64,000 bases of DNA, taken from the NCBI GenBank assembly GCA_021613535.1, contig CP075495.1, positions 10,354,001 through 10,418,000 of the forward strand, written 5' to 3'. Below are positions 6,601-50,100 of the stretch, piece after piece. The notes beneath the pieces were generated by a model, which ran no database searches, had not been told where the DNA came from, and saw only the letters and a program-made list of their open reading frames with translations. Origin of the DNA: Adineta vaga. Taxonomy: Eukaryota > Animalia > Rotifera. The position numbers and the translations under genes were made by a program. How positions within the stretch are numbered: the first letter of the stretch is position 1; each line of letters starts with the position of its first letter.

Positions 6601-9600
6601 AGAGATAGTTATCATTTTAAAAGAGGTTTTTGTTTATATCCTAATCATTAATACATACCTGAAACTTATTCTGTTGGTCACGCTTGACTGACAAAGATAT
6701 TAAATGGTTTGAGTATAGGTTTTACTTGTAAGGTAACCAGTTATGTATTTGAAATAAGCTTTTTCATGACATAATTGGTATTTTGATGCATCGAACGGAT
6801 TCAGAAGAATCGATATCTACGAAAAATCGTGCTGATGATTTATTTTTTGTTTTGGCAACTGGCATATTACCGATTATTGCTCAAGGTGCATATATTTTTG
6901 ATGTTTTCTATTATCATACTTATGGTGAATTAAGTACCGGTTATGAAGGTTTACTTTCATCAATATTGAGTGTCTTTGCCTATTTGCAATACTGTGTCCC
7001 ATTTCGATCACGTTATGTACGATTTTTTTATCATTTATTTCTCTGGATTTTATCCGAAGTTGGAACATTAGGTCATTTAGTATCATACGCCAAAAAAGAC
7101 GATGTACTTCATGTTGTTCTATATGCTCTATGGGCAACAATAGATTCGATTTATTTCATATGTCTAATTTATTGTCGAGTCTTTGGTAAAAGTCGTGGTC
7201 TTCATGTTCACATGCCAATAAAACAAGAACATCTCTTTCATTTTATTTCACGTTTAGAAGTTATTCTTGCGATATTTATTCCAGTCTTTTTTAATACACA
7301 TTTGATTACAATGACGAGAGATAATATTGCATTTTACATTTTATTTGATTTTTTTGCTGAACACTATCATCGTTTCAATGGAATTAAAATCAAAGCAACA
7401 TTATATATATTTGTTGTTGCAGTAACAGCATCAGTTACAACTGAATGGATTCATGTTGCTAGACACGAACAACGATTTGAAATTGCATCGTTAATATGTG
7501 AAATTGTTGCTGCTTGTCTTTGTTATTCGTTAATTGTTATGCAATTCTTTCCGTCTAACTTCGCTCAGAAGAAAAGTCGAAAGAGTAAACGATTAGAACA
7601 AATTACAGCAAGAATGTCAGTTACTACTGAACGAACATCTGATAACCGTTCAACTGATCAAGTTTCTAATGAAACCGAGACAGAAAAAGTGGCGAAATTT
7701 TGAGATTGTAATTATACTAACGTATATGTATATATGCATATTTTAATTTAAAAAATGAAGTTTTACTTTTAAAAAATAAAGTATATATATATATATTATC
7801 ATATTTTCTTCATGAAATAGTATAAAAAGTTTGATCAAAGATTTGTTCTTTTCTCTCATCTCAGTGATATCGCTAGATGTGCATAGAACTATTCATTTCA
7901 AATACTTTTGGATGTTTTAGAGAATAATTTTGCGAGAATAAGATTTTATTAATATATCATAGAAATCAATAGATTAGTATATAGTTAAAATTGGTTTGCA
8001 AATACTTGTGATCTATTAAGCATGAAAAGTCATGCGAACATGAACTGTTCCAGATGATTTAAGACCCATTAATTTTGGTAGTTTTACCCAATCATCGAAT
8101 GTTCCTGTTTGTTTAACAGAAGCAAGTTTAATTTTAGCTGAACCAATTGAATCTCGATCAGTTGGACCATCATCATCATAAACTTTTATATGTAAATGAT
8201 CTTGTTTTTCTTCTACACGACTAAACATATATTCGAGAGTAAATATATTACGAAAAAGCTTTATATACCAAACAACTACTTACAATTGGAATGTTTCATT
8301 CCATTGAGGATTGTTTGAATTTGAAATCGTTGCTGTTCGTTGTTTATAATCATCATCGAGATAAACTTCTACATAAGCATCATTTGCACCAGTAACAGTA
8401 TCTTCATCTTTAAGTTCTTTAGCTTCTACAATAGTTACCGATAATTGTCCAGCCATAATCAATTCGAGTGTAGATTAAAATAGTCAATAGAGTAAGTTTT
8501 TCTCGTCGATTTTTATATTCTAAAACAATAGATTGTTTATTCATGCATATCGATTAGTGAGAGAGAAAAATACATATCATTGACAAACAAATAAATATGA
8601 GACGTCATATTTTATTTTGGTCCGATTTATAATCATCGAACATATATTCTTATGAATAACAATTAAAGAATATAAAGATATCCGTCATAGTTAGCAATTG
8701 GAAGCAGATAAACTTGAAAATTTGAAGCATATATTGCAAAGAAAACAATTTTTATCTTTAAAAAATTGAAATATTTTGTATTTGAAATTTTCTTATTGTT
8801 GAAATTTTTTCGTAAAGAAAAAGAAATAAAATACGTTTAGGAAAGTTTCTGTGAAAATATATCTTGTTAAAAAAGTTAATTATTTGAATAATTATTGCCT
8901 ATTTTATAGACTAAAATCTTTTCTATGAATAATTATTTAGAAATTCCAATGATTATTGATAATGCCACATCATCACCAATCATTGTCACCGAACACGATA
9001 ATGTAACAATGAAATGTCAAGCTCGAGGTCGACCTATGCCCTATATATCATGGTTTCGTCGATATCGAGATGGAAAAGATCTTCATCATCAAATTCGATT
9101 AGAAAATCAAATATTAGCAAATAATACTGATGGTTTATATCATTTAATTAATGTTAGTCGTCATCAAAATGGACATTATGAATGTCGTGCATCGAATGGT
9201 GTTAACGATCACGTTGTTAGCAAAGATATTGAATTACGTGTGCTCTGTAAGTAGAAATTCAATCGTTTAGTTTTGTCAAAATGATAATGCATGAAAAATA
9301 AGGGTGAAAACAATGCACTTGAATGTTTAAGTAGAAAATGCTCATCTTCCTAATTGATAAATACGTGAAGATAATTAGAATTGTATATTTCATGCTTAAG
9401 ATCATTTACGTCAGTGAACTATGCACGGAACACTGACCGAGGTAGATAAATATATATATATATATATATAATAACAAGGTAGAAACTAAACTATCTAAAA
9501 AAACAAAATAATGAGTCGAGAGTAATTGAAACGAACTCTGATGACGTCTAAGAGTCATAATGCGTTGTTGGCATGTTTTATGTGCAGTATGTTTATTTTT

Positions 9601-39700: not shown

Positions 39701-40112
39701 TCAAGACAGTTTCCATCAGTTAGTGGTCAAAGAAATCCAGCTTTGTCGTATTCTGCTCAAAGGTATGTATAGAACAGAGAGAGAGAGAGAAGTTTCTTAT
39801 TTTATTTTGTTTTAGTTCACGAACTTTTGGTGGTTGGATAAATGGTCGTAAAGTACCCGTTCATAGTGGTCCACGTTTAATCGTGTTTATACTCGGTGGT
39901 GTTGCTTACAATGAACTTCGTTGTGCATACGAAGTAACACAAAGTAATTTAAAGAAATGGGAAGTATTTATTGGTAAGTTGACAAGCTTGTCAAAATGAA
40001 TGAAATTTTGTTCATTTTCTTTTTGAATCTCTTAGGCAGTGATCATATATTAACTCCAAAGACTTTTCTTCGTGATCTTGAAATGAGATTACGAGATCCA
40101 AATGAACAGTAA
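36756..40112 (+). CDS. STXBP1: Syntaxin-binding protein (Munc18/UNC-18/ROP), multi-exon
   Basis: Motifs [118 protein letters not shown] and GSDHILTP. Confidence 0.97.
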
Positions 40113-40600
40113 AGATATGCTTATCAAATTTCCAGGTGTTTTCTTTTCTCATTCCATATAAACGACACAAATGACAATTTTCTCTTTGATATTTATCCAT
40201 ATTATTGCTTTGTCAAATTATAATCCTTTAAGAATGCTTATTTTATTTCTATTTCTCATATATATATATCGAACTTTTCTTGTTTTTGCTTATTTGTATA
40301 TCTGTATAGTTGGTTCAGTACATATCATTGATCAAATACATATACATATATACAAACAAAATTCTTTCGTTTGTTTTGTGCAATGTTTCGAGAGCAAACC
40401 TTTGATATTGTCGAATGAGTATACTAAAATTTTCAGTTTTTAATTCGAGTGATTTAAAGAACAAGTTTTTGTTTATGTATATGTTTTTCAATATTTGTTT
40501 TATTAAACATCGTGATATCTTGTTTTCTTTATTTACACCCGACAAAGATAAATATAATCAATAGTTCATGAAAAAAAAAGATTATTCTTTCTCTTTCCAG

Positions 40601-41350
40601 ATGTTGAAAGTTTTGTCACTTGTTAGATTGGTGAATCCAAATGTTTTAGCCTCATCAAAAAGATTATTTCATTTAACACAGACAGTGGGATTGAAGAAAA
40701 GTAAGACGAAACATATCATGTGGAATGACTAAACTTCTGATTCATAGATATATCGATAGTAATAGGACATGATTTTCATAAATAATAGAATCTTATCATC
40801 TTACAAAAGCATTCAACTTTCATTTCATTTTAGTTACGGAAAAAGTTGAAGGCAATGTGATAACAGTAAGTTTTACTGAAAATGATCTTGATTAATGATT
40901 GTTTTTTGTCTAGTACGAAGGAGAATATATTAATGATAATGAAAAGAATGTTTTAAAATTATCCGGACCTGAAGAAGTTTGTATTTGGTGTAAATTTGAT
41001 CGTCGATCGATTCATATTCAACATACAGTATGTGAAGAAACGACACAAAAGTTTTCAATTCTTTTTTTCTTATCTTTAAGGATGTTCTCGTTCTTCGACA
41101 ATATCTTCGAAAAGATGGTACAATTCTTCCTCCTGAAATAACTGGTCTATGTCCAAAACAGAATGATAAATTACATACATTAATTCGTCAAGCTCGAATG
41201 ACTGGTTTAATTTCATATCCAACTGTCGCTGTTACAAAACGTGAACCACTTCTTGTTGATCCAACATTAAGACCTGAATTTGAACAATATAATTCATATT
41301 GGGAGAAATATGAAGTGTTAAAAAAGAGAGATCACTATCTTGGACCATAA
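40601..41350 (+). CDS. MRPS18A: Mitochondrial ribosomal protein S18A (mL66), 4 exons
   Basis: Basic presequence-like N-terminus, a CIWC zinc motif, and IQHTDVLVLRQYLRKDGTILPPEITGLCPKQ..LIRQARMTGLI, typical of bS18-family mL66. Confidence 0.85.
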
Positions 41351-41465
41351 ATTTTGTTTAGATTTGTTTGTTTTCAAATAAAAGATAGGCTTATTTTCAA
41401 GATAAATGAAAAGATTCGTTATAATTTTGAAAATGAAATGAGTTTATTGTTTTTAGTATTCGAAA

Positions 41466-42435
41466 ATGCTTTCGACTTGGATTGATATATCAAATTTGAA
41501 AAAACCATTGAAATTCAATGAATTATCAATTGATTTTAATCCTGAGTTATATAATGCTAAACCATTAACGGATGATATACAGAAAAAGTTAGATGAAAGA
41601 TGGAATCAATTGTTAAATGAGACGAAACCAGGACGAATTCTATATAATGAATCCAAATTTCGTCTGCATTCAATTCAAACGAAAATAATTGATGAAAATG
41701 CTATGGAATTTGTACTTAATCTTGGTCTAACTGATTACAAATCATTTATTTGTACACAACAACAAAATTTACCTGATGATATACGTCAACATATAACTGA
41801 AGATCATCTATCACATCCTCTTGGTGTCGGTTGTCTTCTTATAACATCAGATGATTGCATTGTTTTGATTAAACGAAATTCGAATTGCGTTGATTCACCT
41901 AATCTATATGATTTACCTGGTGGTCATCCAGAACCAAAGTAAGAATGAAATATAATTCAAAAAAGACTTTATTATCTTACTCATTGTTTTAGAAATGCAA
42001 AATCCTATTCAAACGAAGATATTATTGAAGAAATTCGTTTATCAACAATGGCAGAATGTGTTGATGAAACAAATGTAGATCGAAATACACTTCTCGTTGA
42101 TTCATTCTTTTTTATTCTAATTATTACACGGAATTTAAATCAACATGGTCGACCTGCTATAGAATCTTGTCTTAGGTATAACTGAAATTCTTTGAAAAAT
42201 AATAAAAATGATTAAACATCTCATACGATTATTTTAATTTAGAACATCAATGTCATCGAATGAATTACAACAACGTTATAATCTTCAAACACATATTGAA
42301 GCATTTGAATCGACTGAATTAAAATTTTGGCCTTTAGATAAAATTTCTGATCTTTTAAATTCTTCTCAAACATTAATTTCAATTACACCAGCTTGTCATG
42401 CAACTTTAACAGCCTATTCACGTTTATTGTTTTAG
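41466..42435 (+). CDS. NUDT22: Nudix hydrolase NUDT22 (UDP-glucose pyrophosphatase-like), 3 exons
   Basis: Motifs LYNESKFRLHS, LNLGLTDYKSFICT, HLSHPLGVGCLLITSDD, DLPGGHPEP, GRP and EAFES. Confidence 0.9.
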
Positions 42436-43778
42436 ATGTATCATTTAAGTACACAATATCACGAATGGTTATTTACAGTTGAACAATTAAAAGAATTACG
42501 TATGAAAAGTAATTCGGAATATGTTCAAACACATGTATGTTACATAGATTTTAATTGAAGCCGTTTTATTTCATCAATAAAATAGACTGCACAAGATTGT
42601 TTGACAGTCGATGAAGAAGCTATGGTTTTACGTTATTATGAAATACAATTGAAAGATTTTTGTGAGAAATTCAAACCATCCATGACAAAAATATCAATCG
42701 TATGTTGTTGTTATGCTCAATTAAAATCTATTTGTTTCTCTCTTTTCAAGGCTGTTGCTATGCAATATTTCAAACGATTTTATCTAAATAATTCAGTGAT
42801 GGATTATCATCCAAGAGATATTTAGTAAAAAGAAAAAAACGAATTGTTATTTTTGTTTTTTGATAAAATTCTTTTTCTTATGTTTAGTTTAATTTGTGTA
42901 TATTTAACTAGTAAAACAGAAGAATTAAGAATATCAATGCGAGATTTTCTTGCGAATATCAAAGATAGTACAAATCTTGATCATACAGCTGATATTCTTT
43001 TATCATATGAATTATTATTAATTGAAAAAATTCATTTTCAACTTGTTATCCATACTGCACATAGACCATTCGAAGGTTTGATTATTGATTTGAAGGTAAG
43101 AATAAGAAAAAAAACAAAAACATTTATCATTTATTTATTTGTTATGCATCTAGACTCATTACTTACGTGATAATGTGAATGATGCCGAACGACTACGTGT
43201 AACTGGTTATGAATTTCTTGATAAAACTTTATTAACTGATGTTTATTTTCTATTTCCACCCTCACAAGTAAAATATCTTCATATTCTTTCGAGAAAGAGA
43301 GAGAAAAAAACATACATGTATTTTTTGCTTTCATTTGTACTTAGATTGCACTTACAGCATTAGTATTTGCTTCTGTAAAAGCAGGAGTCAATATTGATGA
43401 ATATATTCTTAAACATATTTATGGTTCATTAGAATCAGATCAAATGCAGAAAATTAAAGAAACAATTCGATGTAAATATTCTTTTGTTCCATTTTGAATT
43501 ATTAGCTCAATCATATATTTCTTTCTTTCTTTCTTCAGTAATTGCAAGTGTTGTTAATGCACCAACAAAATTTAAGAAAAGTGAGGTGAAACAAATGGTC
43601 GACAAATTAGAGAAATGTTATAACACTAATAATGATCCACGTACAGATGAATATAAAAAGAAACGTTTAGAACAATTTCAAGCAGTCACTGATTATGAAG
43701 CAAGACATTTGGTAAATATTTTTCGAGATTTTTCATTATGGATTATATGTATATTTTTGTTTTTTCTTTTAGCCATAA
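42436..43778 (+). CDS. CCNH: Cyclin H (CAK/TFIIH subunit), multi-exon
   Basis: Motifs [82 protein letters not shown] and [16 protein letters not shown]. Confidence 0.95.
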
Positions 43779-44140
43779 TGTTATCTATTATTGTCGAGCA
43801 TCTGTTATATAAAAGTATTCTTTTATCTTTGAAATCTGAAGAAAGGAAATAAATCATCGAAATTAAAACATACAAATATTTCTTTCTTTTTTAACGATAT
43901 AAATAAAATGACGAAAACAAATATTTCGTTGTCAAGAAATAAAATATTCTTGTTTAAAAAGAAAAGCAAGCAAGCAAGCAAACAAACAAACAAACAAGCA
44001 AACATTCATATGAGCAGATAAAGCAACAAAAAGAAAGAAAGTGTGATTTATTTTCACTTGCATAAATAAGCAATAATATTAACATGGAAATTGCATCACA
44101 TATTAATACAATAATTGCTGACGAAAGAAAAAAGAGTTAT

Positions 44141-47100
44141 CTATGCATGATAATTGTCCGTTGATGGTTCAGCAACAATATGTTGTAATTCATCATGAAT
44201 AGAAGAGATTAAATTTTTTGTATTGACAACACTTTGTTTAGCAATTATGTATTCATCACGAAAATCATTTCGTTTAGAAGGATCATTTGTTAGATCGGAT
44301 GGATTTAATTGAAAAAGATGTTGATTAGGTCCTTCTCCATGTGTCCATGTATTTTGTATTGGCACTCGAGAATCATCTCGTGTTTTAGGTATTGTATCAA
44401 CATAAACTTCATTTTCATGAAATTTATGATGTCGTTGGCCACGTTGAGGAATAGAAACTTGAGAATTCGGTATACCGTAGACATCAGGTGAATCCATAGC
44501 TCGATTTATTGATACGGAGTCATCATAAAATAATGGCGGATTTGAACGATGAGATGATTGAGGATAACGTTGTCTAATATTAACATCATCGGACGCGTAT
44601 TTTGGTTTTAATTCAACAGGTGTATAGCGTTCAATATCATGGGCACGATCACCTGCTTCATATGGATTGTAATGAAGACGTAGAAGTGTTGGATTAGGAC
44701 GCTCTGATACTTGTGGTATGATAGGCATATGATGTGATTGATGATTATCATTGATAATAGGTGGATTTCTAGAATCATACATGGTAGAATGAACACGACG
44801 CTGTTGACGACGTCGCTTTCGTCGTTCATTAGTTGAATCAGGATTATATGTTTGATTTGGCTCAACTTTATCTAAAACCTCATCCAATAAACGATGTAAT
44901 TGGTTTCTTCCGGCTTCGATTTCCGATGCTTGAGCTATGCGACGTACTATGATAGGTGGATCACGCATAGACATATCATTTCTTGGTCGAATGTAGGCAT
45001 TAGAAGGATCATTTTCGAATGGTCGTGTTTCGGATTGATGTGCAGTAGAATGATTTGTAACTAAAGTACAAATTAATTATATTCGATCACATGAATTATT
45101 CTTCTTCTGTACTTACTAGGCGGTATTATTCTATTCGATAATGACGAATGATGAAGTCGATCAAGATCTGTCAATGGATCAGCATAACGTTGCTAAAGAG
45201 AAGGTATAAATTCTCTTTTACTATTCATCAAATAAAAATTTTCAAAATTTACTTCAAATTTTTCCTGTAAACGAAGTTTGTTTCGCCAACGATCAACATC
45301 ATTTTGATGACGTATTTCTTGCATAGGTATCTCAATTGATACAGGCTGTTGCAATGGATTATTCGACGTTTTCTGTAATTCTATCGGTGGTAAACGATGT
45401 GGCGGTACACTATTTCCGATGAGAAGATCATTTTGTGGTAATAGATGAATATTATTTGTAGGCGTTGGTTGTTCTTTTCTTGTTTCAAGGGGAATACTTT
45501 GATAATCCTATTGAAAAAGCACAATTAGTCACTTCTCTTTAGTTATGTAAAGAACTTACTTGTGTGCGGCCCGGTGCTCGTGGAGCATTATAAACAGTCT
45601 AAAAAGAAGAACGACATTGCTGTATGAGAATGGAATTAATTTCGTGTATATACTTGAACATTGTTTTGATCATATGTTCGTGGTCGACACTTCAAATAAA
45701 GACAACAACCTAAACCGATGAGCAATAAAGCAAAAACAATTGGTCCAAGAACAGCACCGATAATCCATAGTTTACGATCAGTCGATGAAGGTGACGTTGA
45801 ACTTCCATCACCAGTGTCACGTACAAAGTCACCATCAATATCATAACCAAGTAAAAAAGGTATCTGTTCTGATGGCACTCTCGCAGTAGCAACTCGGACT
45901 TGACTAGCTGTTAACTGTGTTCTATTACATGAATCACTTGCAGTATAATTAACCATATATAATTGTGGATTAGCGGTAAGACTCGAAATCTAAGATATTA
46001 TTAACAATATAAATTATATATTTAAACGGAAAGATCGATTTTCCATTTACTCACTAAAGTTACATTTCCAATAATGATAACAGTGTAGTCAAGACATGCT
46101 TGACGCTTACGTCGAGATGAAAGTGAACATTGTGAATCAGATTGATTATTTAAACATTGAAAACCGACTCTAATAACATTACTTAAACCCTGAATAAGAT
46201 TATTTACATAAGAACTATTCGTTGAATCAAACTTTTGTGTACGAAAAACTTTGAACACTGAAATATAACAGATAGTATTTACATAGATATGCCTATGAAT
46301 ATATTATTTAAAAACAAACCTGTTGAAATAATATACAACTGAATACTCGTACTTGTTGTTGTTGTTGTTAATGGGACAGTTATACTTGTCATATTGATGC
46401 TACTAATACTGGTAAATATAGACGCAACTGTTTGAGATATTGATGCTGTTGTAATAACAGTTGAACTAGTTGTGTTTGAGAGAGTTGTTGATTGAGTAGT
46501 GATAGTAGTAATTGTTGTCGATAGACTACTTCTAATGATAGAACTCAATGAACTGATTATTGTAGAAGCAGTTGATACAACAGTGGTTGGTTGTGAAGAG
46601 ACTGTCGTTGTTATTGTCGGATTCGAAGATTGGATAGAAGTGGTTGTTTGATCATTGTTACCTATGAATAAAAGTAATAATAATCAGATCATGATTAGTT
46701 CCAAAAAATAGATTCATTTTTGTTTGTATATCTTACTCATTTGTGACGAAAAGGAAGAGACACTTGTAGCTATTGTTTGTGTATTCGTACTTGATATACT
46801 GGTCGAAGTGAGTGGTATGCTAGAAGATCCAATTTGAGTCGATGTTATTGTAATTGAAGAACTTTGAAGAGTCGATGTATCACTGTGAATTGATGTGGAT
46901 GGTACAGATGAACTAGGAGTTAATGTAGTAGCGGAACTCATTAATGATGATATAGTACTACTGAAAATACTGGGCGTTGCTGCCATCGTTGTACTACCTT
47001 CTCCAGTTATAGTTGTCATAGAAAACTAGTAGCTGTCGATCCAGTTTGTGTTGATAGGAAACTTGAAGTACCGTCAGTTCTAGGGCTTGTTAATGTCGAA

Positions 47101-50100
47101 ATAATCGATGTTGAACTAAAACTAGTTGTAGTAATTGTTTGTGTAGATCGTTCGCTACTGCTCGTAACAGAGGATGTAAAGGTAATCGTCTGTGCAGTTG
47201 CTGTTGATGTGCCCGTCAATTGACTAGTATCTGTATGTAGTGATGACAAAATATTAGTACTTGTTTGGTGTGACACATCTGTGTACAAAGATGATGTCAC
47301 TCTTGTCACACTAATAGTATTTGATGTTGAACTACTAGCGGTTTGACTTGTAATAGTATAAGGTGATGAAATCGATGTATCCGTTGTAAGCAATATTGAT
47401 GAGCTAGTTGCTGTAAGAAGAGAGGTAGAAACTGTATTGGCACCAGTCAAAAGTGTACTAGTAATTGTTTGACTAGTATATGTTTGTGGTGATGAAGATA
47501 AAGCACTATTTGTCGACATTCCCGAAGTAGCTGCATAAACTGTCGATGAGCTACCTAGTGTTTGACTTGTATCGGTATGCAATGAAGAAGAGGGCATGAA
47601 TGTGCTTGTTACATATGATGTATCTGTATGTAGAGAAGTACCACTGGAGAATGTTGCAGGTGAAGCTGATATAACAGTTGCAGTATTTACGGTTGCACTA
47701 CTAAGAGTTCGACTGGTATCTGTATGTAAGGATGAAGAAAATACACTAGTTATCATAGTACTGTGAACAGTCTGACTTGTGTCGGTATGCACTAACGTTG
47801 AACTTGTTACTGTTAAGAGAGAAGCAGAGGTTACAGTAACCGTAGACGAAGGTGTACTAATAAGTGTTTGACTTGTATCGGTATGCACTAACGTTGAACT
47901 TGTTACTGTTAAGAGAGAAACAGAGGTTGCAGTAGCCGTAGACGAAGGTGTACTAATAAGTGTTTGACTTGTATCGGTATGCACTAACGTTGAACTTGTT
48001 ACTGTTAAGAGAGAAACAGAGGTTACAGTAACCGTAGATAAAGGTGTACTAATAAGTGTTTGGCTTGTATCGGTATGCAACAATGATGAACTTGTTACTG
48101 TTAAGAGAGAAGCAGAGGTTACAGTAACCGTAGACGAAGGTGTACTAATAAGTGTTTGACTTGTATCTATATGTGCTGTTGTAGATATTCTACTAGTCAG
48201 TGTTTGTGATGTATCAGTGTGGGTTAGTGATGAACTTGTGACCGATAAAATAGAAACGGATGGTGTGGTAACTGTATGTATACTCGAACTTGTCATAGGC
48301 CGACTTGATTCAGTATGCAATGGTGATGGTGTAGTAATAAAAGTGCTAGTATCTCGCGACAGGTCAGTGTAAAGAGACGATAGACTTGTGTGTGTTACCG
48401 ATGACGTTTGCATTGCAGTAATAGTGGTTCCTATTGTGCTCTGAATAGTTGCACTTGTCACTGTCGATAATACGGATGATGATGCAATGCCAGTATATGC
48501 TGTAGATAATGTGCTTGGTTGAACGGATGATTCACCAGTGATTTTCATTGATGCAGCTATATCGTCACAGTATTTGTTGTTACACTCGTAGTTACCTGGT
48601 ACGTATTCATAGACGTTGGTGAGGCTGTACTCATGCTCGTCTCTTGTGATAATCCAAAATGGAAAGACGATTGACTAGTCAAAACAACAGTTGAGGATTG
48701 TGCAACAGTCATGGTGTTTGATGTAGTCACACCGACAACTTGAGTTGTGTCAGTACGTGCAGAAGATATTGATGTAGGGCTAACTGTTGTCCTTTCTGTA
48801 TCTGTTTGCAATAAAGATTGAGTTGTTGTCGATGACGATGATGATGTTGTTACGATGGCAACAGTACTACTTATGTAATAGTCGGTATTTGAATTGTACT
48901 ACTGTATGAAGAAGTGATAGACAACACAGTCGATGTGCTGGTTTGTACTATACTGCTAGGTGATGAAGATTGAATTGTCGATACTGAAATGGGAACGGAT
49001 TCTGCAGTAACAGTATTTGTTATTACGTTGATAGTTGTCTGAGTAGTATTGTTGTATGTAGTTGAAGATAATGTGCCGATATCTAATGTTTGTAAGATGC
49101 TTGTGTATGCAGATGGTGTTGATGATGATGATGACTGAGTTAATAGACTAGTAGTTGCAGTTGTTGAACTAGTTGCCTGCGTTGAATTTGATTGGAACAA
49201 AGTAGATGCACCAACGTCTGATGAAACACTTGAGATCATAGATGAATTTGGTGATATCGAAGTATTATCTGCAGAAATTACACTGCTATTGATGGTAGTT
49301 GTTGTAAGTTGTGGATTATTTGTTGAGGAACTCATAACTGATGGAGATAATGTGGCATTTTGGATAGTACTTGGATATGTTGAAGATTGGTTCGATTCAC
49401 TAAGAGAGACATCTCGGATTTGAACAGTAGTTATAATTGATTGGTTTATAGTTGAATCTTGGAAAGTTGAAGTTGCAATAGTGTTATTTTGCATTGATGT
49501 TAACATTAAGTTAGTTATATTTAACGGAGTTGCTTGCGTACTGATTATTTCAGAACTAACATGGTAACTATTGGTAGATGAATTGTCGATAGCATTTAAG
49601 CCTGATTCTGTTGACAACTTAGTTTCACTTGTATATAGTGTTGTACCTTCATTTGATAATGTTGGATCTCCATCTAAATAGAAAACAGTGGATAAATAAA
49701 AAATAAACACATTGAGTAGATATGATATCCACAGAAATTGCAATGAACCATATATTCTTGTCAAATGCAGCACAATAAGTCATTTGTTTCATAGCAGAAG
49801 AAGATAAGCATAGCAGAACAAAGCAAAAGCATCACATATATAGATATAGTTCTGTTTGAAATTCGTTATTGATATTATAAATGAAGAAAATAAATGGTTA
49901 ATTTCTATATCAATTGATATAACCTATATGGATCAAGAAGACACAACAAATTCGCATATGTATATAAGTTAGCATCGAAGAAAAAGAAAAAAATAAGACA
50001 AAACTAAGAATGAAAAACACTTCTAGCGAAGAACTTTTCTTTTAACTTTCTTACCAGCTCTTTTTACTATATTCGAAGAATAGAAATGGACAAATATAAT

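What the first reader, a model, noticed from the sequence alone, without database searches (positions are those of the whole stretch)
40585..43778. Operon-like MRPS18A-NUDT22-CCNH run: each ATG is preceded by an apparently unpaired splice acceptor
Seen: co-oriented genes with gaps of 488 nt (STXBP1 to MRPS18A), 115 nt (MRPS18A to NUDT22) and 0 nt (NUDT22 to CCNH). MRPS18A starts TTCTTTCTCTTTCCAG|ATG. NUDT22 is preceded by GTTTATTGTTTTTAG (ending 41456), about 75 nt after an AATAAA (41377), with no good donor or promoter space between them. CCNH is preceded by the near-identical GTTTATTGTTTTAG (ending 42435). Known: spliced-leader trans-splicing occurs in bdelloid rotifers, and nematode and tunicate operons are resolved in this way with short spacers and are enriched in mitochondrial and housekeeping genes. 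Inference: a polycistronic unit resolved by SL trans-splicing. I know of no well-characterised rotifer operon.
Basis: partly seen in the sequence, partly recalled or inferred. Interest (0 to 1): 0.85.

Follow-up and report, generated by a model that had tools for sequence, protein, structure and literature searches.

The report
Spliced-leader operon candidate in bdelloid rotifer
Three unrelated housekeeping genes of a bdelloid rotifer lie head to tail with almost no space between them; RNA data show the rotifer spliced leader joined to the middle gene and put the last two genes on one RNA contig, so this looks like an operon, which I found no paper reporting for rotifers.

Summary
The gaps are 488, 115 and 0 nt, and a pyrimidine tract plus AG precedes each ATG.

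Shown by RNA contigs from four studies:
- MRPS18A mRNA is polyadenylated at 41406, after AATAAA at 41377.
- 50 nt further on, the canonical rotifer spliced leader (SL) is joined at AG 41455-41456, in front of NUDT22.
- One fully spliced contig runs SL-NUDT22-TAG|ATG-cyclin H.

Four other bdelloid taxa known only from RNA contigs repeat parts of this. Three of them carry the dicistronic contig (one with SL letters at its start), and one carries 22 nt of the SL on NUDT22.

Conservation: gene order, the 101-115 nt MRPS18A-NUDT22 spacer and the TAG|ATG junction are kept across Adineta and Rotaria. Public gene models even fuse the neighbours.

Not shown:
- SL at 40601 (MRPS18A) or at 42436 (cyclin H).
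- Any RNA bridging MRPS18A and NUDT22.
- Absence of internal promoters.

The "near-identical" acceptor strings are at chance level.

Verdict: a likely SL-resolved operon, MRPS18A > NUDT22 > CCNH. Whether STXBP1 belongs to it is uncertain. The last pair is unusual because the stop codon doubles as the putative acceptor.

I found no paper reporting rotifer operons. This scan has already noted at least eight similar candidates elsewhere in this genome.

The parts
39814..40112 (+). Last two coding exons of the Sec1/STXBP1-like gene (39814-39973 and 40036-40112; stop TAA at 40110-40112).
   Evidence: GT..AG joints in four runs. The orthologous gene carries Pfam Sec1.
40113..40505 (+). STXBP1-like 3' UTR. 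It is transcribed at least to 40505, which leaves at most 95 nt before the next acceptor.
   Evidence: RNA contigs end at 40443 (at a variant site) or at about 40505 (tables 3 and 8).
40448..40555 (+). Non-coding block conserved between Adineta and Rotaria socialis. It is either the end of the STXBP1 3' UTR or a possible MRPS18A promoter, and it holds a TATA-like GATAAATATAA near 40548.
   Evidence: Alignment A1. nhmmer finds it at E about 1e-24 in A. steineri and R. socialis but not in the other loci.
40585..40600 (+). Pyrimidine tract plus CAG directly before the MRPS18A ATG. This is a putative trans-splice acceptor whose use is not shown.
   Evidence: Sequence. A Y-tract plus CAG|ATG is kept in A. 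steineri, R. socialis and the L023 taxon.
40601..41350 (+). MRPS18A (mL66) coding region: exons 40601-40700, 40834-40865, 40914-41027 and 41081-41350 (stop TAA).
   Evidence: Joints, Pfam Ribosomal_S18 and the solved-structure match to MRPS18A.
41377..41406 (+). AATAAA (41377-41382) and the poly(A) addition site of MRPS18A mRNA (about 41406).
   Evidence: A loose end of 11 A follows 41406 in run X2, and contigs end at 41390-41415. AATAAA..GATAG..TATTT.CAA is conserved in six taxa.
41407..41456 (+). 50-nt spacer between the MRPS18A poly(A) site and the NUDT22 trans-splice acceptor. It holds the conserved AATGA..ATTGTTTTTAG, a likely branch point plus tract plus AG.
   Evidence: No RNA contig lies on 41416-41454 (depth arithmetic). 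Alignment A2.
41457..42435 (+). NUDT22 mRNA body: 5' UTR 41457-41465; coding exons 41466-41938, 41993-42175 and 42243-42435 (stop TAG at 42433-42435).
   Evidence: SL tails CTTACCAAG / AACTTACCAAG stand before 41455 in runs X2, X13 and X12. Joints are and the NUDT22 identity.
42422..42435 (+). Zero-gap junction. The last NUDT22 codons form a pyrimidine tract, and the stop TAG is the putative acceptor AG for CCNH.
   Evidence: TAG|ATG is invariant in 7 sequences from 6 taxa, while the MRPS18A stop varies among TAA, TAG and TGA. Contigs read through the junction.
42436..43777 (+). Cyclin H coding region: exons 42436-42534, 42586-42699, 42751-42824, 42888-43095, 43154-43267, 43345-43471, 43539-43711 and 43772-43777 (stop TAA).
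   Evidence: Joints and contig pieces. The ortholog P0010 matches human cyclin H at 6e-57 from residue 1. It is a single copy in this genome.
43778..44030 (+). Cyclin H 3' UTR, with AATAAA at 43848, 43902 and 43938. It converges on a minus-strand gene.
   Evidence: Contig ends lie at about 43912-44030 and minus-strand contigs start at 43924.

Best explanation
MRPS18A > NUDT22 > CCNH in this bdelloid rotifer genome is most likely one transcription unit, cut into mRNAs by 3'-end formation and spliced-leader trans-splicing. The genome has 100.8 Mb in 6 contigs; earlier scan notes name it Adineta vaga. The unit may begin with the upstream STXBP1-like gene.

Shown:
- MRPS18A mRNA is cleaved and polyadenylated at about 41406, 24 nt after AATAAA.
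- 50 nt downstream, the canonical rotifer SL (..AACTTACCAAGAG) is joined at AG 41455-41456. This gives SL + 9-nt UTR + AUG of NUDT22.
- NUDT22 and CCNH have no spacer (UAG|AUG), and RNA contigs carry SL-NUDT22-CCNH with all introns removed.

Inferred:
- RNA polymerase II runs from MRPS18A (or from STXBP1) through CCNH.
- The invariant pyrimidine tract plus TAG at the NUDT22 stop is a second trans-splice acceptor. It would turn part of the precursors into SL|AUG-CCNH mRNA.
- The precursors left uncut would serve as NUDT22 mRNA, with CCNH as its 3' UTR. Processing would then be mutually exclusive, as proposed for Ciona operons and for C. elegans SL1-type operons.
For: 1. SL on NUDT22. Loose ends CTTACCAAG (X2, X13) and AACTTACCAAG (X12) stand before 41455, from three studies.
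   - The same letters followed by AG+GT occur 53 times in this genome as SL RNA genes reading ..GCTTATTACAACTTACCAAGAG|GTAAAT.
   - They match the published 23-nt rotifer SL (PMC3795323).
   - In relatives, L034 starts with 22 nt of the SL before NUDT22, and L020/L021 start with CAAGAG.

2. MRPS18A poly(A) tail at 41406.

3. Spacer of 101-115 nt in six taxa. Only the poly(A) signal block and the acceptor block are conserved, with no other conserved element between them.

4. Dicistronic spliced contigs.
   - A. vaga X1 (1914 nt) and X12 (1796 nt).
   - L019, L020, L021, L022 and L035, from three other bdelloid taxa and five samples.

5. TAG|ATG in all 7 junction sequences from 6 taxa, while the MRPS18A stop codon varies. 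A TTAAC branch-point-like motif about 27 nt upstream is also invariant.

6. Gene order Sec1 > S18 > NUDT22 > CCNH is kept in A. steineri and R. socialis, and S18 > NUDT22 > CCNH in R. sordida. Public gene models fuse the neighbours.

7. The run is bounded by opposite-strand genes. STXBP1 has an ordinary divergent 5' region of about 510 nt with no acceptor next to its ATG.
Against: - No contig bridges 41416-41454 in any of four runs, so co-transcription of MRPS18A and NUDT22 is not shown.
- No SL tail was listed at 40601 or 42436. Two loose ends were not displayed, and assemblers clip short side branches, so this is weak negative evidence.
- Contigs are built from 31-letter words and cannot prove that one molecule carries both genes.
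- Contig depths differ. MRPS18A is 2-8 times NUDT22, and CCNH is about 2 times NUDT22 in X2 and X13.
- Didymodactylos carnosus has 1.9 kb with a transposon-like insert and no NUDT22 between S18 and CCNH. Tight linkage is therefore not universal in bdelloids.
- A block conserved between Adineta and Rotaria, with a TATA-like motif, lies 45-150 nt before the MRPS18A ATG and could be a promoter.
- A scan for SL tail plus CCNH start in metagenome contigs gave only a chance hit.
Confidence: 0.6

Rival explanations
1. These are tightly packed but independent genes. Each has its own promoter lying in the 3' part of the gene before it. SL trans-splicing only trims short outrons, as it does for the many bdelloid mRNAs that are trans-spliced. 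The dicistronic contigs would then be assembly joins of overlapping transcripts: a NUDT22 mRNA whose 3' UTR runs into CCNH, and a CCNH pre-mRNA that starts inside NUDT22.
For: - No bridging contig lies over 41416-41454.
- Steady-state depths of the three genes are unequal.
- There is a conserved TATA-like block before MRPS18A.
- D. carnosus keeps S18 and CCNH 1.9 kb apart.
- The reads tool itself warns that a contig across two genes shows no single transcript.
Against: - The 101-115 nt spacer holds only a poly(A) block and an acceptor block as conserved elements.
- With a 0-nt gap, any NUDT22 3' end and any CCNH outron must be transcribed across the boundary. Satou et al. used this argument for Ciona (PMC1488885).
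- Dicistronic contigs recur in four taxa and seven assemblies.
- TAG is invariant at the junction.
Confidence: 0.2
2. NUDT22-CCNH is a true dicistronic mature mRNA, and cyclin H is translated from it by termination-reinitiation at UAGAUG or by another internal initiation route. The junction AG is never used as a trans-splice acceptor. This reading is compatible with MRPS18A > NUDT22 being an SL-resolved operon boundary.
For: - Every RNA contig recovered that holds the start of CCNH has NUDT22 directly upstream.
- No SL-CCNH contig was found.
- Stop and start codons abut in all taxa.
Against: - Reinitiation after a 282-codon ORF is inefficient in eukaryotes without special elements (established knowledge).
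- Reinitiation does not require TAG, yet TAG is invariant and preceded by a pyrimidine tract and a TTAAC motif.
- D. carnosus CCNH has its own tttttag acceptor 7 nt before the ATG, so an acceptor just before the cyclin H start is found in every bdelloid locus examined here.
- CCNH contig depth is about twice that of NUDT22 in X2 and X13.
- Assemblers remove 23-nt SL side branches, so missing SL-CCNH contigs say little.
Confidence: 0.15
3. NUDT22 and cyclin H form one fusion protein, as the public gene models of Adineta steineri and Rotaria suggest, either by stop-codon readthrough or by splicing out the stop.
For: NCBI gene models of 564, 519 and 520 aa join the two genes. TAG and ATG are in the same reading frame.
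Against: - Spliced RNA contigs keep the in-frame TAG in all taxa.
- No joint removes it in four A. vaga runs, although three of the joints found were not displayed.
- Cyclin H aligns with human cyclin H from residue 1, and NUDT22 aligns to its natural end.
- The two halves occur apart: D. carnosus has CCNH alone, and L034 and L036 have NUDT22 alone.
Confidence: 0.03

Closest known systems
Caenorhabditis elegans SL2-type operons
   Same: Same-strand unrelated housekeeping genes. The upstream mRNA is polyadenylated in a short spacer after AAUAAA. The downstream mRNA receives a spliced leader at an acceptor a few tens of nt further on. Here the poly(A) site is 50 nt before the acceptor.
   Different: No specialised second leader is seen. 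The downstream gene carries the canonical rotifer SL, over 11 nt in A. vaga and 22 nt in L034. The spacer from poly(A) site to acceptor is about 50 nt, against about 100 nt typically. SL sequence and phylum are unrelated.
Ciona intestinalis operons without intercistronic DNA, and C. elegans SL1-type operons (PMC1488885)
   Same: The NUDT22|CCNH boundary has no intercistronic DNA. Unresolved dicistronic RNA is found. The same single SL serves monocistronic and operon genes. Mutually exclusive processing of one precursor is the natural reading.
   Different: In Ciona the upstream 3' UTR abuts the acceptor. Here the stop codon itself supplies the AG and the downstream ATG follows at once, so neither gene has a UTR at the boundary. 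Neither a poly(A) tail at the acceptor nor an SL on CCNH has been shown here. The MRPS18A|NUDT22 boundary is not of this type, because it has a 50-nt spacer.
Oikopleura dioica operons
   Same: A compact genome, a single SL and short intercistronic regions (23-30 nt as cited in PMC1488885).
   Different: A different phylum and a different SL. Nothing about Oikopleura was tested here.
Chaetognath operons (Paraspadella gotoi, PMC12460157)
   Same: Chaetognaths are gnathiferan relatives of rotifers. About half of their genes are trans-spliced and 18% lie in operons. They have no operon-specific leader, and operon genes are housekeeping-biased.
   Different: The leaders differ, and common ancestry of the operons is untested. 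That paper lists rotifers among lineages with trans-splicing and operonic transcription but, in the passages I read, presents no rotifer operon.

Membership tests
SL-resolved eukaryotic operon (general) | Two or more same-strand genes separated by very short spacers. | tested here: met
   Coding gaps of 115 and 0 nt. The distance from poly(A) site to acceptor is 50 nt. The run is flanked by opposite-strand genes.
SL-resolved eukaryotic operon (general) | The downstream cistron's mRNA carries the spliced leader at an acceptor next to the spacer (NUDT22). | tested here: met
   SL tails stand before 41455 in three studies. There are 22 nt of SL in L034 and 6 nt in L020/L021. The SL RNA genes are in the genome.
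SL-resolved eukaryotic operon (general) | The downstream cistron's mRNA carries the spliced leader (CCNH at 42436; MRPS18A at 40601). | tested here: inconclusive
   No SL tail was listed at either site. Two loose ends were not displayed, and short side branches are lost in contigs. A pattern scan gave only a chance hit. The acceptors are conserved.
SL-resolved eukaryotic operon (general) | RNA that spans a cistron boundary (polycistronic precursor). | tested here: inconclusive
   For NUDT22|CCNH it is met at contig level in four taxa. For MRPS18A|NUDT22 no contig covers 41416-41454 in four runs. Single molecules were not seen.
SL-resolved eukaryotic operon (general) | One promoter upstream of the first gene and no internal transcription starts. 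| not testable with these tools
   This needs CAGE, TSS-seq, GRO-cap or ATAC data.
SL-resolved eukaryotic operon (general) | [quoted passage not shown] | tested here: met
   A poly(A) tail follows 41406, after AATAAA at 41377-41382. The signal is conserved in six taxa.
Operon without intercistronic DNA (Ciona type / C. elegans SL1 type) | The poly(A) site of the upstream mRNA directly abuts the acceptor AG of the downstream gene. | tested here: inconclusive
   For MRPS18A|NUDT22 it is not met, because there is a 50-nt spacer. For NUDT22|CCNH no poly(A) tail at 42435 was seen. An intron-less NUDT22 copy with an A-run right after TAG (L036) is only a hint.
C. elegans SL2-type operon | A specialised leader (SL2) on downstream cistrons. 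| tested here: not met
   The leader on the downstream gene NUDT22 equals the canonical rotifer SL over 11 nt (A. vaga) and 22 nt (L034).
Dicistronic mRNA translated by termination-reinitiation | Stop and start codons overlap or abut, and the downstream ORF is translated from the dicistronic RNA. | not testable with these tools
   UAGAUG adjacency is present and conserved. Translation was not testable.

The most novel reading that the evidence does not exclude
Bdelloid rotifers have genuine SL-resolved operons, and the NUDT22|CCNH boundary is a new extreme form of them. A sense-strand stop codon UAG serves at the same time as the trans-splice acceptor for the next gene, whose AUG follows with no UTR. 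One precursor would therefore yield either a dicistronic NUDT22 mRNA or an SL|AUG cyclin H mRNA, and the balance between a nucleotide-sugar hydrolase and a CDK-activating-kinase cyclin would be set by a splice decision. The junction has been kept since before Adineta and Rotaria split.
Probability: 0.35. Interest if true: 0.8.

Novelty: new variant of a known kind. Interest (0 to 1): 0.7.

Why it matters
SL trans-splicing has been known in rotifers since 2005. The searchable literature reports no operons or polycistronic mRNAs in this phylum, and one paper says so explicitly (PMC7986045).

This locus offers several things:
- A documented, conserved operon candidate with direct SL and poly(A) evidence. 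It would add a phylum to the short list of animals with operons.
- A bearing on whether operons arise wherever SL trans-splicing exists.
- A link to the operon-rich chaetognaths, which are fellow gnathiferans.

It also has a practical consequence. Public bdelloid gene models fuse such neighbours (NUDT22+CCNH, Sec1+S18), which inflates the count of "fusion" genes and distorts orthology and gene counts.

The stop-codon-as-acceptor junction is a compact test case for mutually exclusive processing of a dicistronic precursor.

Tried and rejected
- **Near-identical acceptor strings as a shared motif.** Rejected. The 12-mer is at chance frequency in the window, and across species only a generic T-tract plus AG is shared.
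- **AATAAA in CCNH intron 1 (42576) as the NUDT22 poly(A) signal.** It is not conserved in A. steineri, and contigs splice that intron out.
- **Loose end at 40360 in three runs.** This is an artefact. A contig from another chromosome (C6:9.02 Mb) shares a 16-nt low-complexity stretch.
- **Rfam scan of 39900-44100.** No family matched.
- **Scan of metagenome contigs for SL tail plus CCNH start.** It gave one unrelated marine contig.
- **A second (ohnologous) CCNH locus in this genome.** None found.
- **P0164 locus, a 46%-identical intron-less cyclin H in a metagenome.** Its neighbours are unrelated, so it is uninformative.
- **NUDT22 between S18 and CCNH in D. carnosus.** Absent. A transposon-like insert lies there instead.
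- **MRPS18A transcripts of relatives, to read their 5' ends.** Only genomic-type contigs were on record.
- **The conserved block before MRPS18A.** It was not found in D. carnosus, R. sordida or L023.
- **Joined (spliced) A. vaga protein models.** These were not searched. I searched exons by reference, and used spliced RNA contigs of relatives by reference for full-length searches.
Full report
**What is in the sequence**

The window is AT-rich (about 30% G+C) with short introns. It lies at C2:10354001-10418000 of a 100.8 Mb assembly in 6 contigs. Earlier notes of this scan call the organism Adineta vaga.

- TTCTTTCTCTTTCCAG ends at 40600, directly before ATG 40601.
- GTTTATTGTTTTTAG ends at 41456, 9 nt before ATG 41466, with AATAAA at 41377.
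- GTTTATTGTTTTAG ends at 42435. Its TAG is the NUDT22 stop, and ATG 42436 follows directly.
- The coding gaps are 488, 115 and 0 nt.

**Gene identities**

For full-length searches I used spliced RNA contigs of relatives by reference.
- The last MRPS18A exon hits Pfam Ribosomal_S18 at 4e-12. Its best solved-structure match is human MRPS18A/mL66.
- A relative's spliced NUDT22 matches human NUDT22 structures at 8e-27.
- A relative's cyclin H matches human cyclin H at 6e-57, aligned from residue 1. ATG 42436 is therefore the orthologous start, and the two proteins are separate.
- The upstream gene is Sec1-family. I take the STXBP1/Munc18 assignment from memory of the N-terminal motif; I did not test it.

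**RNA evidence in A. vaga**

The four runs laid on the stretch come from four studies and are spliced, so they are RNA assemblies.

1. Every predicted intron is confirmed by GT..AG joints.
2. The MRPS18A contig in X2 ends at 41406, followed by 11 unmatched A. This is a poly(A) tail 24 nt after AATAAA. The other runs end at 41390-41415.
3. The NUDT22 contigs begin at 41455 and are preceded by unmatched CTTACCAAG (X2, X13) or AACTTACCAAG (X12).
   - These letters plus AG plus GT occur 53 times in the genome.
   - There they form SL RNA genes reading ..GCTTATTACAACTTACCAAGAG|GTAAAT.
   - They equal the 3' end of the published rotifer leader GGCTTATTACAACTTACCAAGAG (PMC3795323).
   - The acceptor at 41456 is therefore used in trans, 50 nt after the upstream poly(A) site.
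4. In X1 (1914 nt) and X12 (1796 nt), one contig runs from the SL tail through NUDT22, across 42435/42436, and through all cyclin H exons with every intron removed.

Depth arithmetic on the binned table gives two further points.
- No contig lies on 41416-41454 in any run. A precursor bridging MRPS18A and NUDT22 is therefore not seen.
- In X1, MRPS18A exon 1 coverage fits a contig of about 100 nt starting near 40600, with nothing on 40506-40600. That fits a 5' end at the acceptor but is only an inference.

No SL tail was listed at 40601 or 42436. Two loose ends were not displayed. I expect, from how such assemblers usually work and without checking Logan's settings, that a 23-nt leader on an internal site would be clipped as a short side branch. 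This negative result is therefore weak.

**Relatives**

Gene order and spacing:
- Sec1 > S18 > NUDT22 > CCNH is the order in four A. steineri assemblies and in Rotaria socialis. R. sordida has S18 > NUDT22 > CCNH.
- Public gene models fuse NUDT22+CCNH (564, 519 and 520 aa). In R. socialis they also fuse Sec1+S18 (755 aa).
- The MRPS18A-NUDT22 spacer is 101-115 nt in six taxa. It has two conserved blocks: AATAAA..GATAG..TATTT.CAA and AATGA.TT.ATTGTTTTTAG|TAT. The T-rich middle is variable. I see no third conserved element that could be a promoter.

The NUDT22|CCNH junction:
- It reads pyrimidine tract + TAG|ATG in all 7 sequences from 6 taxa. The MRPS18A stop varies among TAA, TAG and TGA in a partly overlapping set of six taxa.
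- A TTAAC motif about 27 nt upstream, a plausible branch point, is also invariant. It is coding sequence as well.

The MRPS18A start:
- A Y-tract + CAG|ATG before MRPS18A is kept in A. steineri, R. socialis and the L023 taxon.

RNA contigs of other bdelloids repeat the A. vaga picture:
- L020 and L021, from two samples, start with CAAGAG + 7 nt + ATG of NUDT22 and run through TAG|ATG into full-length cyclin H.
- L019, L022 and L035 are likewise dicistronic.
- L034 starts with 22 nt of the SL, joined 9 nt before the NUDT22 ATG. That 9-nt leader (TATATATAA) resembles the letters after the conserved acceptor in R. sordida, which has two more.

Exceptions:
- Didymodactylos carnosus has S18 and CCNH 1.9 kb apart. 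A transposon-like element with perfect inverted ends of about 42 nt lies between them, and there is no NUDT22.
- Its CCNH still has a tttttag acceptor 7 nt before the ATG.
- Cyclin H is a single copy in this genome.

**Limits of the unit**

STXBP1 has an ordinary 5' region of about 510 nt shared with a divergent Tudor/KH gene, and no acceptor next to its ATG. Its 3' UTR is transcribed at least to 40505, which leaves at most 95 nt before the MRPS18A acceptor.

A 108-nt block (40448-40555) is conserved between Adineta and R. socialis. It could be the end of the STXBP1 3' UTR or an MRPS18A promoter, and it holds a TATA-like motif near 40548. I cannot decide between a three-gene and a four-gene unit.

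**Interpretation**

The MRPS18A|NUDT22 boundary has the anatomy of a nematode-type operon boundary: poly(A) signal, cleavage, a short spacer, then an SL acceptor. The difference is that it uses the ordinary leader.

The NUDT22|CCNH boundary meets two of the three criteria used for Ciona operons (PMC1488885). It has no intercistronic DNA, and unresolved dicistronic RNA is found. The third criterion, SL on the downstream gene, is not shown.

With no gap, any NUDT22 3' end and any CCNH 5' end require transcription across the boundary. The invariant TAG and tract argue that the site is an acceptor. If so, one precursor gives either an SL|AUG cyclin H mRNA or a dicistronic NUDT22 mRNA.

The alternatives are independent promoters inside upstream genes, reinitiation on a true dicistronic mRNA, and a fusion protein. 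They are scored in the rivals section.

**Novelty**

Six full-text searches found no report of rotifer operons (and the reading). [quoted passage not shown]

This scan has already flagged at least eight similar clusters elsewhere in this genome, and the zero-gap junction on this window. I did not re-test the other loci.

**Caps reached**

Noticed in passing
G000 SL RNA genes, e.g. L001-L012 (C1:1639465-1639645, C2:8684671-8691981); clusters at C5:9.88-9.93 Mb: There are 53 exact copies of the SL 3' end plus GT. Most sit as head-to-head (divergent) pairs about 166 nt apart, several in tandem clusters. Minor variants occur at the 5' end of the leader (GTTACTTATTAC.., ..TTATTAAAAC..).
   Followed up: partly
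L036:3981-4880 (ENA/JGI/NCBI metagenome scaffold): An intron-less, intact NUDT22. Its TAG is followed at once by ACAAAAAAAAAC, and a 9-nt direct repeat AACTCATCA flanks the unit. This may be a processed retrocopy of an NUDT22 mRNA whose poly(A) tail began at the stop codon, which would fit Ciona-type cleavage at the acceptor. The repeat is at chance level by count, and the likeness to the SL upstream is weak (9 of 414 windows score as high).
   Followed up: partly
L034:878-996 (JGI 3300030741 RNA contig): A Rotaria-like NUDT22 transcript carrying 22 nt of SL. The sequence after TAG is a decayed cyclin H start (ATG>ATA plus a 1-nt insertion). In this copy CCNH was lost and its remnant serves as the NUDT22 3' UTR.
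   Followed up: partly
L017:8103-8945 (Didymodactylos carnosus): An element of about 845 nt with perfect terminal inverted repeats of about 42 nt (MITE or DNA-transposon-like). It lies between S18 and cyclin H, where Adineta and Rotaria have NUDT22.
   Followed up: no
L013, L025, L026 (public bdelloid annotations): Gene models merge neighbours: NUDT22+CCNH (564, 520 and 519 aa) and Sec1+S18 (755 aa). L013 also has a run of N with a duplicated NUDT22 start (6664-6890), which is probably an assembly artefact.
   Followed up: partly
window 40701-40833: MRPS18A intron 1 is covered by low-depth contigs (3-9 against about 100-190 for the exons) in two allelic forms in runs X1 and X12. This indicates some intron retention or pre-mRNA. 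The other introns checked are not covered.
   Followed up: no
window 46000-49800, minus strand: Long Ser/Thr-rich repetitive ORFs (up to 510 aa, HTDTSQTL-type repeats) with strong GC skew. Probably a mucin-like surface or secreted protein gene.
   Followed up: no
window 40257 and 43954-44011: An ATATAT insertion polymorphism in the STXBP1 3' UTR in run X1. A (CAAG/CAAA)n microsatellite downstream of cyclin H, where reads are cut.
   Followed up: no
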